Virus record (IMG/VR): IMGVR_UViG_3300037294_000266
Coordinates: 62,001 to 126,000 of that record
Strand: one strand, 5' to 3'
Length of the DNA: 64,000 nucleotides
The notes beneath the pieces were generated by a model. That model was given only the letters and a program-made list of their open reading frames with translations, was not told the origin of the DNA and did not search any database. This document shows positions 19,483 to 58,270 of the stretch, one piece after another (position 1 is the first letter of the stretch; every line of letters begins with the position of its first letter). The position numbers were made by a program, and so were the translations under genes.

Positions 19483-20162
19483 TAGTTGCTCCGTGGTTTC
19501 TTGTTGACTCGCATGCCCACGATACGCCGCATTCTAGCAGCAAACTCTGGGGATGCGCCATCAGCATCTAGGTTATCAAGATCAGCAAACACATTCATCG
19601 TAACGCCTTTGCGGACGTAGTAGTTAGTGCCTGGATATTTGGTCATGCCTTCAGTGTCACCACACGCCATCTCGATGATACGCGGTTCTCCTGAGAAACC
19701 GAACTGGGGGAACAGTACTACTTTCCCGTAGAAAGAACCCTTATCGTGTTCCTGCATCCAGTTATTGCACGCATCATGCTGGATAATCATTTCCTGTTCT
19801 GGATCCCATTTGGTACCTTCAGTCAACCAATTGTCACGGGTATCAAGTTTCACCGGATAGACTTCCAAACCATCCTTGCCGGTGAACAACATTCCGTGAT
19901 TACCGTCTTCGATAAACTGTTCAACAAGAATAGCACAGTCACGGATCTTGTTGATACACGACCACATGTACTTCACAGGATCGTCTGCACGGAAGATATC
20001 GCGACACAGGCGCTTTTGGATATCGCTGGTGACTTCACCGTAAAGCCGCGATGCCAGCTTCTTAACCTTTTTAGGGTTTGGGTTCTTGATGCCTTCGAAG
20101 ATGTCTAGGATAGCGGACTCTTCTTTAAGGTTATCGTATTCTGCTGGCTGGATAGGATCCAT
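19482..20162 (-). CDS. Hypothetical protein
   Basis: 226 aa, AGGAG SD. Confidence 0.75.
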   Translation of the reverse strand: MDPIQPAEYDNLKEESAILDIFEGIKNPNPKKVKKLASRLYGEVTSDIQKRLCRDIFRADDPVKYMWSCINKIRDCAILVEQFIEDGNHGMLFTGKDGLEVYPVKLDTRDNWLTEGTKWDPEQEMIIQHDACNNWMQEHDKGSFYGKVVLFPQFGFSGEPRIIEMACGDTEGMTKYPGTNYYVRKGVTMNVFADLDNLDADGASPEFAARMRRIVGMRVNKKPRSN

Positions 20163-20193
20163 TATAAACTCCTGGGTATGAACTTGTTAAACG

Positions 20194-20216
20194 ATGAGGG
20201 AGCGTTGCTCCCTCAT
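20194..20216. terminator. Intergenic stem-loop
   Basis: ATGAGGGAGC-GTT-GCTCCCTCAT. Confidence 0.7.
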
Positions 20217-20225
20217 TATGCCGAC

Positions 20226-20897
20226 TTAGTTAAACCAACGACGGAACGCTGCGCTGACAGATTCCTTCAACAAATCTGAATGAATGGAATCCATTGTCGG
20301 TGCAATGAAATTCTTGATGAAATAATCACCCATTACATCAGGCGCATGCGCCATCGAGGTTCTGATGATGGTCTCGGCTTGTTCTGGCACAATGCGGCAA
20401 GGCGAACAGAAGTACTTGGTGGTGATCTGACTTCCACCAGCGTGTGCACCGAACTGATTCTTGTTGCTGTGCATGGCCCACTGTGTGAAGATGCCGTCGA
20501 CAACGAAGTATGTACCGCCCAAGACACTGAGGAGATCGAACAGTTCATCACAGTCAAGATCGGTGTCGTTGACGCCTGATGCATAGCGCTCTACGTCGAA
20601 CAAACGACTGATCGGAACAATCCCTTCTTCAACAGCCAAGACACGGAACGCTGTAACGAGTTCGTCAAAGACCATGTCGTAAGCATCCTGACAACCCACC
20701 GGCAGAAGCCGCTCGGGGAACGTATCGGACAGAGCATCGCAGAGGATGGTGGCTTCGCCTTCACTTTGAACGAGATCCCAGACATTAGGATCTTCCGTCT
20801 TTTCCATACCGAGCACTTCCGTCAACTCTTCGAGGAGTTCGCGGTTGGTAACGTTGGAGAAGTAGACGCGATGGTGAGTGGTTTGGCTTGTGTGCAT
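20226..20897 (-). CDS. Hypothetical protein
   Basis: 223 aa, GGGG SD. Confidence 0.75.
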   Translation of the reverse strand: MHTSQTTHHRVYFSNVTNRELLEELTEVLGMEKTEDPNVWDLVQSEGEATILCDALSDTFPERLLPVGCQDAYDMVFDELVTAFRVLAVEEGIVPISRLFDVERYASGVNDTDLDCDELFDLLSVLGGTYFVVDGIFTQWAMHSNKNQFGAHAGGSQITTKYFCSPCRIVPEQAETIIRTSMAHAPDVMGDYFIKNFIAPTMDSIHSDLLKESVSAAFRRWFN

Positions 20898-54206: not shown

Positions 54207-54653
54207 TTAAAGGCCGCACCAACCAACTTTAGTGCCGCCAGAATAAGGGACTGCGAGTCCTCGAGCAATAAGCTCATCTCCAACGACTCTGCCGTCTACG
54301 ACCACAGTGGCCAGTAAGCGAAAGTACTTATCACGATCGAGGTTGGTCAGTGTCACTCGTTTACCATTGGCAATCATTTCACCGACAGCGTCACGAGCTT
54401 TTATGGCCAGTATTTTCTCTGCATCACGTTCAGCCTTTGTGGCACAGTCACTCCGCATCTCTGGTGTATCGATGCCATTTACTCTGACTGACAACCGATC
54501 TCCAAAGACATCAGGCAGGTACGGAATCTGGACAGTGAGTGTGTCACCATCGTAGATACTGACAACGTCCTCAGGAATGAGTTTTATCTCTTCAAGAGGA
54601 TACGCTTGAACGGTGCCACATGCCAGCAGAAAACTAAGAAGTAAAATACGCAT
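54207..54653 (-). CDS. Secreted thermonuclease (SNase family)
   Basis: Signal peptide, YDGDT, VRVNGIDTPE, DKYFRLLA, LIARGLA. Confidence 0.9.
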   Translation of the reverse strand: MRILLLSFLLACGTVQAYPLEEIKLIPEDVVSIYDGDTLTVQIPYLPDVFGDRLSVRVNGIDTPEMRSDCATKAERDAEKILAIKARDAVGEMIANGKRVTLTNLDRDKYFRLLATVVVDGRVVGDELIARGLAVPYSGGTKVGWCGL

Positions 54654-54797: not shown

Positions 54798-54885
54798 TGG
54801 CGGAAGCGGTGAGATTCGAACTCACGGACCCCGAAGAGTCGACAGTTTTCAAGACTGTAGGATTCAACCGCTCTCCCACGCTTCC
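54798..54885 (-). tRNA. trnS: tRNA-Ser(UGA)
   Basis: Complete type II cloverleaf GGAAGCG...ACAGTCT-TGA-AAACTGT...long variable arm...GTTCGAATC...CGCTTCC-G-CCA. Confidence 0.97.
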
Positions 54886-54890
54886 AATAC

Positions 54891-54963
54891 AGGTGCTGAT
54901 ACCGGGAATCGAACCCGAGTCCTCCGTCACCAACAGGTGCGCCTTCTCTGCGCCACTATCTAC
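54891..54963 (-). ncRNA. Degenerate tRNA-like element (intact T-arm, weak anticodon arm, ACCT end)
   Basis: D-stem GCGC/GCGC, T-arm TCGGG-TTCGATT-CCCGG, acceptor 6/7 bp. Confidence 0.6.
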
Positions 54964-54965
54964 CA

Positions 54966-55039
54966 AGTAGATAGACAGGACTTTAACCTGCGACCTCCTG
55001 TCTCGTTTACCGGGACACTACCAGCTGAGCTATAACGGC
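54966..55039 (-). ncRNA. Degenerate tRNA-like element with non-matching acceptor strands
   Basis: TAGCTCAGCTGGTAG D-region, T-arm GCAGG-TTAAAGT-CCTGT. Its 3' strand CTATCTAC pairs with the next element rather than its own 5' end. Confidence 0.55.
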
Positions 55040-55044
55040 GAAAT

Positions 55045-55133
55045 AGGCGGAGAGCCACCTTAGACTTCCTGATGTGCCCGACGGGAGAGCACGGAAGTAA
55101 CGGGTTAGATTAGCACCCTCCAAGGGGCTCTCC
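55045..55133 (-). ncRNA. Y-shaped RNA with long acceptor-like stem and G-CCT tail
   Basis: GGAGAGCC/GGCTCTCC plus CCTTGG/CTAAGG, hairpins GGGT/ACCC and ACTTCC-GTGC/GCAC-GGAAGT. Confidence 0.55.
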
Positions 55134-55137
55134 TGTT

Positions 55138-55258
55138 TGGTCCAAGTATCCGGGTTCGAACCGGTGGAGTATAACATCCGATCGACGTGCGACCATAGTC
55201 GCGTTCGTCATCAGACATCACTCCCAGAGCCACCTCCCAAACCCGATCATAATCTTGG
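55138..55258 (-). ncRNA. 121-nt tRNA-like RNA with long irregular stem replacing the anticodon arm
   Basis: Acceptor CCAAG/CTTGG with A-CCA end, T-arm CCGG-TTCGAAC-CCGG, about 24-bp interrupted stem capped by GCGAC-TATG-GTCGC. Confidence 0.7.
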
Positions 55259-55440
55259 GACTAAGGCCGAATTACACGGCGAGCACGGATCTCTGTACTT
55301 GTACACTAGGCGCGAGCGTTTACGACCATCGAGTTCTTTTGCTTCCGAACGCTAAAGGTAAGGGGCCTCGACGTCATCTACTCGCATTAATCGGTTCTCT
55401 CACTGCGGATCTCTACATATATCAGCAGTGTTAATATTTT

Positions 55441-56691
55441 TTAATTGGTTATTACAGTACACCCACGGCTTATTAAAGTGTTTTTAGACGCTATACCGTT
55501 TGCAGAAGGTGCAGCGCTGGTTCCAGTTATTGTAATGTTTTCATTAGTAAATAACGTGGTCCCATTAGTTCCGTCTAATGAAGCAAATTGTGCAAGAAGA
55601 GCATCGACAGAAACAGCTGATAGTGGACAGTTGATATAAACCGATCCATTGACTTCTTTTAAACTATTGCTTAATTTAAATATAGTGAGTCCAGTCAGCG
55701 TAGGCCCGAGACTTATAGCATTGCCGTCAGTTAGGTTACAGCCTATTTTCTCTAACGAACTAAAGGTTAAATTTGTTATAGCTGGTGCTGTTGAAATACT
55801 TAGCCTTCCTTTAATTTGAGTTAAATTAGGAAGACTGACGGTTGTACATGCAGCCAATTCGTTTATACTGAAATTACCTTCTACAGTGGTCAAGCCGGCA
55901 AAGTTAACCGTGGTGCACCCAGCTAAGGTGTTTAACGAAAAGTTACCGTATACCGTAATCAATGAAGGGACGGAGATTATTGCAAAGGCTACATTACTTG
56001 CTATGTTAAAATTACCAACCACCACAGTCAATAGCGGACAAGATAAACTTGTTAGACCAGCCAGGTTAGAGGTAGAGAAACCACCCATTACAACCTTTAA
56101 CTCTGGAAAATTAAGAAAGGATAATGCAACCAATCCACTAATCGACAAGGTCCCTGTAAGGCCTTGTAAATTACTGAACGTTAAAGTCGTTATATCCACG
56201 TTAGCACTTGGAACGACTAACGTGGAAGCCCAAATGCCTGAATAGTCCGGAGTCACAACACTATTTATAGCGGTCGGGGGAGGTGTCAGGATAGCTGTAA
56301 TTGGTTCAGCCACCACTCCTACTGTTGAATAATCTAAAATAAATAAAGTACCGATTGGTGTACCGCCTAAACTAAACCAATCATCCCCATTAAATCCTTC
56401 GAACCATGTGAAATCGGTATTAAACCTAAAATGTCCGCCCTCGGTTACAATGGGGCGGTTTAGTGTAGAACCTACTGAAAACCATTTAACTAAAAAGTCT
56501 AATTTAATTTTATCATCAGACGACATAAAACCGTTTTCTAAAAGGTTTACAATGGCGTGAGCGAGACTTCCAGATTCAAGATGACTTAATAGTGCTGGAG
56601 GTATCAGATCTTGCTTTTTATCAACCCTGGCTATGAGACGTGTCATCAATTTGTTAAATTCTTTTACCATTGTTTCGATGACAGTTGTCAT
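55441..56691 (-). CDS. AT-rich L-domain/LRR-like beta-solenoid protein (possible tail appendage or receptor-binding protein)
   Basis: About 23-aa repeats (F/L-P-x-L-x-x-V-x-G-x-F-x-I), C-cap AAPSANGIASKNTLISRGCTVITN. Start revised to 56691. Confidence 0.75.
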   Translation of the reverse strand: MTTVIETMVKEFNKLMTRLIARVDKKQDLIPPALLSHLESGSLAHAIVNLLENGFMSSDDKIKLDFLVKWFSVGSTLNRPIVTEGGHFRFNTDFTWFEGFNGDDWFSLGGTPIGTLFILDYSTVGVVAEPITAILTPPPTAINSVVTPDYSGIWASTLVVPSANVDITTLTFSNLQGLTGTLSISGLVALSFLNFPELKVVMGGFSTSNLAGLTSLSCPLLTVVVGNFNIASNVAFAIISVPSLITVYGNFSLNTLAGCTTVNFAGLTTVEGNFSINELAACTTVSLPNLTQIKGRLSISTAPAITNLTFSSLEKIGCNLTDGNAISLGPTLTGLTIFKLSNSLKEVNGSVYINCPLSAVSVDALLAQFASLDGTNGTTLFTNENITITGTSAAPSANGIASKNTLISRGCTVITN

Positions 56692-56721
56692 ATATAAATT
56701 TCCTGTGCTCATTTTGTGGAT

Positions 56722-57825: not shown

Positions 57826-57828
57826 AAA

Positions 57829-57910
57829 CACCTCTAGCGAGTCTCGAAGTCGCACACCGTCGATTAGAATGGCTACCAATCGACTGTCCTACCAATTGGA
57901 CGATAGAGGT
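57829..57910 (-). ncRNA. tRNA-like RNA with 7-bp anticodon stem and 12-nt loop
   Basis: Perfect acceptor ACCTCTA/TAGAGGT, D-arm GTCC-AATTGGTA-GGAC, GTCGATT/AATCGAC, T-loop TTCGAGA. No encoded CCA. Confidence 0.75.
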
Positions 57911-57924
57911 ATAAACGCTGTATG

Positions 57925-58157: not shown

Positions 58158-58270
58158 TCGAGAACGCGGGCCGGCGCCGCGTATGGCTGCCTCATTGGGC
58201 TGCCGATCATAGTGCGCGCTGCCACTAGGGCTGCCGCTGATCCGGTGCGGAGACGAACCCGCGTTCTCGA
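58158..58270. ncRNA. Multibranch hairpin with 13-bp closing stem and four GGCAGC motifs
   Basis: TCGAGAACGCGGG/CCCGCGTTCTCGA. GCTGCC on the + strand at 58186, 58199, 58218 and 58230. Confidence 0.65.

What the first reader, a model, noticed from the sequence alone, without database searches (positions are those of the whole stretch)
54891..55039. Tandem tRNA-like pair with swapped acceptor strands (permuted or dimeric fold)
The 3' acceptor strand of the upstream unit (CTATCTAC) does not match its own 5' end. It pairs 8/8 with the 5' strand of the next unit (GTAGATAG) across a 3-nt loop (54956-54974). The outer ends can pair 5/7. This gives a T-arm, capped acceptor and D-arm resembling a circularly permuted tRNA, an uncleavable and unchargeable elbow mimic.
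Basis: partly seen in the sequence, partly recalled or inferred. Interest (0 to 1): 0.6.

Follow-up and report, generated by a model that had tools for sequence, protein, structure and literature searches.

The report
Nested double tRNA-like phage RNA
What looks like two broken tRNA genes in a giant phage is one conserved 150-base RNA, in which a rearranged tRNA-like body sits inside the anticodon arm of another; four phages keep this fold through compensating mutations, but its job is unknown.

Summary
On the minus strand, 55039-54891 holds two tRNA-sized units. The 3' acceptor strand of unit 1 pairs 8/8 with the 5' strand of unit 2 across a UUG loop, and the outer ends pair 5/7.

The anticodon-stem strands are also swapped (5/5). 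The inner halves join into a flawless cloverleaf of 22 pairs with no mismatch and canonical linker lengths. Neither contiguous unit is a credible tRNA.

The window lies in a 266-kb phiKZ-like jumbo phage. A covariance model built from this sequence alone found full-length relatives in two other phage contigs, and a rebuilt model found a fourth. Across the four, 94.7% of pair cells are paired and 25 of 43 pairs changed on both sides. In the capped acceptor, 7 of 8 pairs are compensatory. G-U pairs mark the minus-strand RNA as the folded strand.

So this is a conserved, non-decoding structured RNA: an outer tRNA-like body whose anticodon loop is replaced by a circularly permuted tRNA-like core in the order T arm, capped acceptor, D arm. 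It probably arose from a tandem tRNA duplicate.

The closest known fold is the tRNA-like module of bacterial Y RNA (YrlA), but the tests for YrlA membership fail. Function and processing are untested.

The parts
54891..55039 (-). Whole nested double tRNA-like RNA (149 nt; RNA position n = window 55040-n).
   Evidence: Full-length match of models R2 and R3. It is a single copy in the 266,646-bp phage genome.
55033..55039 (-). Outer acceptor, 5' strand GCCGUUA (RNA 1-7).
   Evidence: Pairs 5/7 with 54895-54901. The same helix pairs 7/7 in L019, L012 and L035, and 3 of its 7 pairs show changes on both sides.
55015..55030 (-). Outer D arm, GCUC-AGCUGGUA-GUGU (RNA 10-25). The loop is canonical, with G18-G19.
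   Evidence: The stem has one U-U mismatch and one G-U pair here, and is perfect in the relatives.
55009..55013 (-). Outer anticodon-stem ('rod') 5' strand CCGGU (RNA 27-31). It is followed by linker AAACGAG (55002-55008). The motif GGUAAA at 55006-55011 is shared with the relatives.
   Evidence: Alignment A6, helix 3, pairs with 54924-54928.
54997..55001 (-). Inner closing stem 5' strand ACAGG (RNA 39-43; it has the position of tRNA 39-43). It is followed by the 5-nt variable loop AGGUC (54992-54996).
   Evidence: Pairs 5/5 with CCUGU at 54933-54937. Its base-pair probability in the RNAfold ensemble is 0.7-0.8.
54975..54991 (-). Inner T arm, GCAGG-UUAAAGU-CCUGU (RNA 49-65).
   Evidence: Helix 5 of A6: 100% of cells paired, and 4 of 5 pairs changed on both sides. 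The same T arm occurs in called phage tRNAs.
54956..54974 (-). Capped acceptor hairpin, CUAUCUAC-UUG-GUAGAUAG (RNA 66-84).
   Evidence: 8/8 pairs here. In helix 6 of A6, 7 of 8 pairs are compensatory. The cap loop is 3, 8, 9 or 26 nt in the four members.
54939..54955 (-). UG linker (tRNA positions 8-9) plus inner D arm GCGC-AGAGAAG-GCGC (RNA 85-101).
   Evidence: Helix 7 of A6, 100% paired. The relatives have GCUC-AGUGGUA-GAGC.
54924..54938 (-). In order: A (tRNA position 26), inner closing stem 3' strand CCUGU (54933-54937), linker UGGU, and rod 3' strand GACGG (54924-54928).
   Evidence: The relatives carry GUGCAC where this window has GGUGAC.
54902..54923 (-). Outer variable loop AGGAC plus outer T arm UCGGG-UUCGAUU-CCCGG (RNA 117-138).
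   Evidence: Helix 8 of A6: 3 of 5 pairs changed on both sides. The T loop is canonical.
54891..54901 (-). Outer acceptor 3' strand UAUCAGC, discriminator A, then CCU.
54798..54885 (-). Neighbouring genuine tRNA-Ser(UGA), 6 nt downstream of the RNA.
   Evidence: ARAGORN, and Rfam RF00005 at 53.9 bits.

Best explanation
The 149 nt are one gene for a structured, non-decoding RNA. It belongs to a small family found in the tRNA islets of phiKZ-like jumbo phages.

Shown: the fold.
- An outer tRNA-like body has an acceptor stem made by the RNA's own 5' and 3' ends, plus a D arm and a T arm.
- Its anticodon loop is replaced by a second, circularly permuted tRNA-like core. That core has a closing stem (equivalent to an anticodon stem), a variable loop, a T arm, an 8-bp acceptor stem closed by a loop, a 2-nt linker and a D arm.
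- The two anticodon-type stems lie end to end, so the RNA has two tRNA 'top halves' and no anticodon loop.

Inferred: origin. The RNA most likely arose as a tandem duplicate of one tRNA. In such a duplicate the domain-swapped fold is available from the start. In this family the swapped fold, not the two separate cloverleaves, is the one that selection kept.

Inferred, not shown: mechanism.
- The RNA is transcribed with the neighbouring tRNA-Ser.
- RNase P cleavage at position 1 and at the 5' end of tRNA-Ser, plus 3' trimming, would release it.
- Its tRNA-like shape would make it stable.
- It would act by binding a protein or ribozyme that recognises tRNA shape rather than the anticodon, as a decoy or tether in the manner of Y RNA-like tRNA mimics.
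For: Fold in this window.
- The swapped stems pair 8/8 and 5/5. The inner D stem pairs 4/4 and the inner T stem 5/5. Linker lengths are canonical.
- The joined inner halves are called a perfect cloverleaf. Their minimum-free-energy fold is that cloverleaf, with z = -2.6.

Family.
- Model R2, built from this sequence alone, finds full-length L019:7866-8018 (54.7 bits, E = 4e-11) and L012:16773-16923 (47.9 bits).
- Model R3, built without L035, finds L035:8306-8474 at 89.4 bits.
- Ordinary tRNAs reach at most 53 bits, and only as 74-80-nt matches with the inner part deleted.
- Nine tRNA-rich unrelated phage loci give no long match.

Covariation on A6.
- 94.7% of cells are paired and 25 of 43 pairs changed on both sides. 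None of 500 shuffles reaches this, and the slid controls give 35-45% paired.
- G-U pairs number 15 against 2 A-C, so the minus-strand RNA is the folded molecule.
- The swapped reading beats the contiguous-unit reading in all four members.
- RNAfold alone returns the nested fold for L035 and L019.

Not a decoder.
- There is no 7-nt anticodon loop with U33.
- Rfam's tRNA model misses it.

Context.
- It lies in tRNA clusters in all four phages.
- No terminator-like site separates it from its neighbours.
Against: - There are only four members, from about three independent lineages. L012 and L019 are close to each other.
- Alignment A6 was fitted to the model's structure, which inflates the pair counts.
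- In this window the outer body is the weakest of the four. The acceptor pairs 5/7, the D stem has a U-U mismatch and the rod has a G-A mismatch.
- RNAfold on this window's sequence prefers a shifted 12-bp central hairpin, and the whole 151 nt is no more stable than shuffles (z = -0.47). This copy may therefore be partly decayed.
- The family is absent from the nearest named phage, pPa_SNUABM_DT01, and from 18 other related records. It is dispensable.
- No conserved protein neighbour was found.
Confidence: 0.75

Rival explanations
1. These are two decaying tRNA pseudogenes, or a recombination scar in a fast-changing tRNA islet. The junction hairpin would be a leftover of tandem duplication or of a template-switch repair event, and the RNA would have no function of its own.
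For: - tRNA content varies widely among the relatives, from 0 to 5 genes.
- In L017, L030 and L032 the same slot holds a plain tRNA-Thr(UGU).
- The first 19 nt of unit 1 are 18/19 identical to L032's tRNA-Thr.
- The outer stems in this window carry four mismatches.
- The whole 151 nt has z = -0.47.
Against: - The nested fold recurs in three other contigs whose helix sequences differ while pairing is kept: 25 of 43 pairs are compensatory and 7 of 8 in the capped stem.
- In all four members the swapped pairing is better than the pairing within each unit. Neutral decay of two independent tRNAs would give the opposite.
- The inner core here has 22 pairs with no mismatch.
Confidence: 0.1
2. The RNA is cut by RNase P inside the cap loop, 5' of G77 (between window 54964 and 54963), and CCA is added after C73, as in M. 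smegmatis YrlA. The result would be two half-swapped pieces of about 75 nt that stay base-paired as a bimolecular double tRNA mimic.
For: - The capped stem is 7 bp plus one, followed directly by a T arm. That is the geometry RNase P measures.
- M. smegmatis YrlA, with a 7-bp capped stem, is cleaved by M1 RNA in vitro, and is cleaved and CCA-tailed in vivo (PMC4201824).
- Cap loops of 8, 9 and 26 nt in the relatives would give a usable leader.
Against:
- S. Typhimurium YrlA and D. radiodurans Yrn1 are not cleaved.
- There are no data for this RNA.
Confidence: 0.1
3. It is the precursor of a decoding tRNA. One version is a permuted or split tRNA joined at the anticodon loop. The other is an outer tRNA whose inner core is an intron that is spliced out.
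For: - The order '3' half then 5' half' is that of permuted tRNA genes.
- The in-silico join of the inner halves is called tRNA-His(gtg).
- ARAGORN with introns allowed reads L012's copy as a tRNA with a 75-nt intron.
- Sister phages carry tRNA-like genes with 35-41-nt insertions after position 37/38.
Against: - No bulge-helix-bulge motif was seen by eye at the junctions.
- The phage genome has no splicing endonuclease, RtcB or Rnl2-type RNA ligase. The Rnl1 search found nothing, but its control genomes were silent too, so it is uninformative. The genome also has no CCA-adding enzyme.
- The would-be anticodon loops lack U33 and are not conserved. The window has UGGUGAC where the relatives have GUGCAC, and that stretch is base-paired in the rod.
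- Bacteria are not known to splice such introns (own knowledge).
Confidence: 0.05

Closest known systems
YrlA-type bacterial and phage Y RNAs (Rfam RF02553); tRNA-like module described in PMC4201824
   Same: - The inner core has the same order of elements: variable region, T stem-loop, an acceptor-like stem closed by a loop, then D stem-loop, all closed by a stem that stands where the anticodon stem would be.
- It is non-decoding and thought to derive from tRNA.
- The Rfam YrlA model gives weak matches exactly on the inner cores of L019, L012 and L035.
   Different: - Scores are 23-27 bits against a gathering score of 69. That is no better than on ordinary tandem tRNAs, and there is no match in this window.
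- The phage genome has no Ro60/TROVE gene.
- There is no GNCGAAN0-1G motif.
- YrlA has a Ro-binding helix at its ends. This RNA instead has a complete second tRNA-like body, with acceptor, D arm and T arm.
Circularly permuted tRNA genes of algae and Thermofilum (own knowledge; reviewed in PMC3400036 and PMC4238349, which were listed but not read)
   Same: The 3' half of a tRNA lies upstream of its 5' half. The breakpoint lies beside the anticodon loop.
   Different: - Those genes give a mature decoding tRNA through bulge-helix-bulge cleavage, circularisation and end processing.
- Here there is no such motif and no endonuclease or ligase in the phage.
- Here the flanks form another tRNA-like body instead of leader-trailer pairing.
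Tandem (dimeric) tRNA precursors in phage tRNA clusters, and the T4 stable RNAs RNAC and RNAD
   Same: - It lies in a phage tRNA cluster with a few nucleotides between units.
- T4 also encodes extra small stable RNAs of unknown function (PMC9697503). That they lie in the tRNA region is own knowledge.
   Different: - In real tandem tRNAs each unit pairs with itself. The model finds only single-tRNA matches in tandem arrays.
- Here the pairing partners are exchanged between the two units in all four members.
Engineered 'tRNA scaffold' RNAs, in which a foreign RNA replaces the anticodon loop (own knowledge)
   Same: The outer tRNA body carries a structured insert on an extended anticodon stem.
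   Different: This RNA is natural, and its insert is itself a permuted tRNA-like core.

Membership tests
Canonical tRNA (Rfam RF00005) | Each unit scores at or above the curated threshold of 29 bits. | tested here: not met
   Neither unit matches even at E<=10. ARAGORN calls only unit 2, with defects.
Canonical tRNA (Rfam RF00005) | The acceptor stem is formed by the unit's own 5' and 3' strands. | tested here: not met
   Unit 1 pairs 4/7. Unit 2 pairs 6/7 only with a 1-nt register shift and a 3-nt 8-9 linker.
Canonical tRNA (Rfam RF00005) | A 7-nt anticodon loop with U33. | tested here: not met
   The loops are AAACGAG (A33) and UGGUGAC (G33). In the family these stretches are linkers or paired.
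Circularly permuted tRNA gene | The 3' half lies upstream of the 5' half of one tRNA. | tested here: met
   The inner halves join into a perfect cloverleaf.
Circularly permuted tRNA gene | A bulge-helix-bulge motif at the termini, with a splicing endonuclease and a ligase available. | tested here: not met
   No such motif was seen by eye. The phage genome has no EndA, RtcB or Rnl2. The Rnl1 search was uninformative because its controls were silent. The host is unknown.
Circularly permuted tRNA gene | A mature, contiguous, aminoacylated tRNA product. | not testable with these tools
YrlA / Y RNA-like (RF02553) | The order V, T, capped acceptor-like stem, D, closed by a stem. | tested here: met
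   Alignment A6; description in PMC4201824.
YrlA / Y RNA-like (RF02553) | A score at or above the Rfam gathering score of 69 bits. | tested here: not met
   There is no match in the window at E<=10. The relatives score 23-27 bits, the same as a tandem tRNA pair.
YrlA / Y RNA-like (RF02553) | A Ro60 (TROVE) gene within about 4 kb on the same strand. | tested here: not met
   PF05731 is absent from the whole 266-kb genome, while the control genomes were detected.
YrlA / Y RNA-like (RF02553) | The GNCGAAN0-1G motif near the 5' end. | tested here: not met
   Read by eye. The nearest strings are AACGAG here and GACGAG in L019 and L012.
Tandem independent tRNAs | Each unit folds on its own, and pairing within units is at least as good as pairing between units. 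| tested here: not met
   Swapped pairing exceeds contiguous pairing in all four members. The contiguous units have z near 0.
Nested double tRNA-like RNA (family defined here by model R3) | A full-length R3 match well above the tRNA background, with eight helices in the nested order. | tested here: met
   The window scores 125.4 bits, L019 168.5, L012 166.1 and L035 89.4, against at most 53 bits for tRNAs. The window, L019 and L012 are in the model; L035 is the independent member.

The most novel reading that the evidence does not exclude
This is a previously undescribed class of phage RNA: a two-headed tRNA mimic made by domain-swapping a tandem tRNA duplicate. It would be released by the host's tRNA-processing enzymes. 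It would then titrate or tether a host factor that reads tRNA shape, for example a tRNA-directed defence nuclease, RNase P or a modification enzyme. It may also show how YrlA-type permuted tRNA mimics arise from tRNA dimers.
Probability: 0.3. Interest if true: 0.85.

Novelty: new variant of a known kind. Interest (0 to 1): 0.72.

Why it matters
- tRNA mimics are a small, much-studied set: tmRNA, Y RNA-like RNAs, viral tRNA-like structures and mascRNA. A natural RNA that nests a permuted tRNA-like core inside another tRNA-like body would add a new architecture.
- It offers a concrete evolutionary path from a tandem tRNA duplicate, through a domain-swapped fold, to a capped-acceptor mimic. That path could explain the origin of YrlA-type RNAs.
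- It shows that 'tRNA pseudogenes' and odd ARAGORN calls in phage tRNA islets can hide conserved structured RNAs.
- It gives a defined 149-nt substrate, with three natural variants, for testing what RNase P, the CCA-adding enzyme and tRNA-binding defence proteins do with a two-headed, anticodon-less tRNA shape.

Tried and rejected
Early ideas that were dropped
- Plant mitochondrial origin. This was a first impression from base composition and weak plastid Rfam matches. It was rejected when the window proved to be part of a 266-kb virus record with phiKZ-type proteins.
- Unit 2 as a 5'-truncated or internally deleted tRNA-Leu. A Leu model hit it at 19.4 bits, and the 3' end aligns to the Leu-Ser pair of L035. 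The family alignment explains the same letters better, as an inner D arm plus rod.
- Units 1 and 2 as recent duplicates. Their similarity (5.0) is below the background of unrelated tRNA pairs (9.6 +/- 7.1). Any duplication is old.
- A tRNA-His origin for the inner core. The G-1:C73 pair and GUG occur only in this window. The relatives have U:A and GUGCAC, so this is not a family feature.

Searches that found no further copies
- The exact hairpin pattern in IMG/VR gave 5 chance matches.
- Two further sequence patterns gave only tRNAs or chance matches.
- Family-derived patterns recovered only the known contigs.
- blastn of this region and of L019's copy against GenBank phages found nothing beyond tRNA-Ser.
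- E. coli genomes gave no match.

Other dead ends
- The neighbouring 423-aa ORF has no relatives.
- The SNase-like ORF is not consistently linked to the RNA.
- MAFFT could not align the window with L035, so models were built from a hand-drawn structure.
- The sigma-70 promoter and terminator scan was uninformative.

Full report
**Where the window lies.** The window is bases 62001-126000 of a 266,646-bp IMG/VR virus record. Its proteins match phiKZ-type families: internal head protein, head-to-tail proteins, and phrog DNA polymerase. The nearest named phage is Pseudomonas phage pPa_SNUABM_DT01, whose DNA polymerase is 81% identical. That phage was described as a possible new genus with two tRNAs (PMC8541153).

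Genes around the finding run on the minus strand. The finding sits in a 787-nt gap between ORF 55441-56712 and an SNase-like ORF at 54207-54653. It lies directly upstream of a good tRNA-Ser(UGA) at 54885-54798.

**The observation.** I number the minus-strand RNA so that position 1 is window 55039 and position 149 is window 54891.
- Unit 1 (positions 1-73) has exactly canonical tRNA segment lengths. Its own acceptor strands pair only 4/7.
- Unit 2 (positions 77-148) is called tRNA-Thr(ggt) by ARAGORN, with an A-A mismatch, a 3-nt 8-9 linker and a 3-bp anticodon stem.
- Rfam's tRNA model reports neither unit even at E<=10.

A bare 8-bp hairpin is not rare in this genome: 21 with a 3-nt loop are found against 4 expected. 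Among 46 adjacent tRNA pairs in phage loci, however, the longest junction stem is 6 bp.

**The swap is complete.** ACAGG of unit 1 (tRNA positions 39-43) pairs 5/5 with CCUGU of unit 2 (positions 27-31). I joined the 5' half of unit 2 to the 3' half of unit 1 in a script.
- The joined sequence has a 7-bp acceptor plus one extra pair, D stem 4/4, anticodon stem 5/5 and T stem 5/5, with linkers of 2, 1, 5 and 0 nt.
- ARAGORN draws it without a single mismatch. Its minimum-free-energy fold is that cloverleaf, with z = -2.6.
- The contiguous units have z near 0.
- The complementary join (unit 1's 5' half plus unit 2's 3' half) is most like tRNA-Thr(UGU) of relative L030: score 31 against a background of 7.6 +/- 6.8.

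The arrangement is therefore: outer-5' half, inner-3' half, UUG, inner-5' half, outer-3' half.

**Relatives.** Loci were fetched through the DNA polymerase and through a conserved upstream element.
- In L017/L034, L030 and L032 the slot holds a plain tRNA-Thr(UGU).
- In L035 the slot holds a 169-nt stretch. RNAfold alone folds it (-51.7 kcal/mol) into an outer acceptor (7/7), a D arm and a long rod. Inside the rod lie an inner closing stem, a T arm, a capped acceptor with a 26-nt cap, a UA linker and a D arm. The outer T arm follows.

I then built covariance model R2 from the window sequence alone, with my hand-drawn structure.
- R2 found full-length matches in L019 (7866-8018; 54.7 bits, E = 4e-11) and L012 (16773-16923; 47.9 bits).
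- Ordinary tRNAs matched only with the inner 80 positions deleted.

Model R3, built from the window plus L019 and L012, found L035:8306-8474 at 89.4 bits.
- Nine unrelated tRNA-rich loci gave no long match, and no match above 50 bits.
- The genome holds a single copy.
- DT01 and 18 other related records have none.

**Covariation.** On the four-sequence alignment A6:
- 94.7% of pair cells are standard pairs.
- 25 of 43 pairs have changes on both sides. None of 500 shuffles reaches this.
- Sliding the partners by 1-3 columns drops pairing to 35-45%.
- The capped acceptor reads CUAUCUAC/GUAGAUAG, ACGGGUGU/ACACUCGU, AGGACUGU/ACAGGCCU and AUGGGGGU/ACGCCCAU. Seven of its 8 pairs are compensatory.
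- The outer acceptor is 7/7 in the three relatives.
- G-U pairs number 15 and A-C pairs 2, so the minus-strand RNA is the folded molecule.
- In every member the swapped pairing beats the within-unit pairing.

Two caveats apply. The alignment was fitted to the model. L012 and L019 are close relatives, so there are about three independent lineages.

**What it is.** It is a conserved, non-decoding structured RNA with two tRNA-like bodies joined tail to tail through their anticodon-type stems.
- One body has free ends. The other is capped.
- In the relatives both D loops (AGUGGUA, AGUGAUA, AAUGGUA) and both T loops are close to canonical, so two elbows are plausible.
- In this window the inner loops are AGAGAAG and UUAAAGU, and the outer stems carry four mismatches.
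- RNAfold here prefers a shifted 12-bp central hairpin. This copy may be the most derived, or partly decayed.

The simplest origin is a tandem duplicate of one tRNA. In a duplicate, both the two-cloverleaf fold and the domain-swapped fold are possible. In this family it is the swapped helices that have been kept by compensation. This origin is an inference.

**Context.** The RNA behaves like a cassette of the variable tRNA islet.
- In L012 and L019 it lies next to a tRNA-like gene with a hairpin insertion.
- The corresponding slot in L014 holds tRNA-His plus about 390 nt. In L016 it holds about 390 nt only.
- No protein gene travels with it.
- The phage has no Ro60, RtcB, Rnl2-type ligase, splicing endonuclease or CCA-adding enzyme. 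The Rnl1 search was uninformative.

**Comparison with known systems.** The inner core has the element order of the YrlA tRNA-like module: V, T, capped acceptor-like stem, D (PMC4201824).
- Rfam's YrlA model touches the inner cores of the relatives at 23-27 bits, far under its 69-bit threshold. That is no better than on a tandem tRNA pair, a false positive the YrlA authors themselves warn about.
- With no Ro60 gene and no GNCGAA motif, this RNA is not a YrlA.
- It is not a permuted tRNA gene of the algal or archaeal kind either, because nothing suggests joining at the anticodon loop.
- T4's RNAC and RNAD are a reminder that phages can encode small stable RNAs of unknown function (PMC9697503). 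That these lie in T4's tRNA region is own knowledge.
- Literature searches found no description of a nested double tRNA-like RNA.

**Mechanism (inferred).**
- The RNA would be co-transcribed with tRNA-Ser.
- RNase P would release it.
- Its tRNA shape would make it stable.
- It would act by binding a factor that reads tRNA shape.
- RNase P might also cut inside the cap, as it does in M. smegmatis YrlA.

**Verdict.** The structural reading is supported and extended. The functional labels are untested. I rate it a new variant among tRNA mimics, of clear interest to RNA biologists.

Noticed in passing
window 55040-55300 (minus strand): A conserved structured RNA of about 230-260 nt lies directly upstream of the finding. 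It is shared with L017/L034, L030, L032 and L035. RNAalifold predicts 59 pairs, 20 of them with compensatory changes. Domain 1 has an acceptor-like stem next to a T-arm-like hairpin (CCGG-UUCGAAC-CCGG here, GGUGG-UUUGACU-CCACC in L017). Domain 2 is closed by GGRGAGC/GCUCYCC, followed by ACC or GCC and UAUUUC. No Rfam family matches it.
   Followed up: partly
window 57826-57912 (minus strand): A tRNA-like gene with a good acceptor, D arm and T arm has an anticodon stem that closes an oversized loop. Rfam's tRNA model scores it 41.5 bits with an 11-nt insertion. ARAGORN does not call it.
   Followed up: partly
L012:16999-17110, L014:16865-16982, L016:17748-17862, L011:15693-15807: Sister phages carry tRNA-like genes of 112-118 nt with a 35-41-nt insertion. 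In L012, L014 and L016 it is a hairpin right after position 37/38 of the anticodon loop. ARAGORN with introns allowed reads them as Glu(ttc), SeC(tca) or Ser(gct). The 'anticodon' differs between close relatives, so decoding is doubtful.
   Followed up: partly
L020:17735-17860 and L013/L018:18083-18208: 126-nt tRNA-like RNAs have an acceptor, D arm and T arm, and an 8-bp rod (CCUCAGCA/UGCUGAGG) that carries further hairpins in place of an anticodon loop. This is a third kind of anticodon-less tRNA-like RNA in this clade.
   Followed up: no
window about 58160-58270 (minus strand); L007 about 20150-20260; L030 and L032: A conserved GC-rich motif with repeated GGCAGCC / GGCAGCG words (CAGCGGCAGCC...GGCAGCGCGC...CGGCAGCC) lies inside a long closing stem, upstream of tRNA genes in several relatives including DT01. 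It is unexplained.
   Followed up: no
L007 about 19655-19730 (pPa_SNUABM_DT01, minus strand): An unannotated tRNA-like element overlaps the end of CDS PA10_00181. It has acceptor GAGGACG/CGUCCUC, a T arm GUGGG-UUCAAUU-CCCAC and a degenerate middle.
   Followed up: no
window 54892-54963: ARAGORN's 'tRNA-Thr(ggt)' is a false call. It is assembled from the inner 5' half and the outer 3' half of the nested RNA. Automatic annotation of this phage would list a tRNA that does not exist.
   Followed up: yes
L012, L014-L016, L019, L007: The ordinary tRNAs of this clade are mostly Asn(GUU), Asp(GUC), Tyr(GUA) and His(GUG), plus Gln. The first four are the tRNAs with G34-U35 anticodons that carry queuosine in bacteria (own knowledge). 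This may hint at what pressure shapes these islets.
   Followed up: no
whole genome G000: Perfect 8-bp hairpins with 3-6-nt loops are about nine times more frequent than the simple expectation: 152 found against 16 expected.
   Followed up: no
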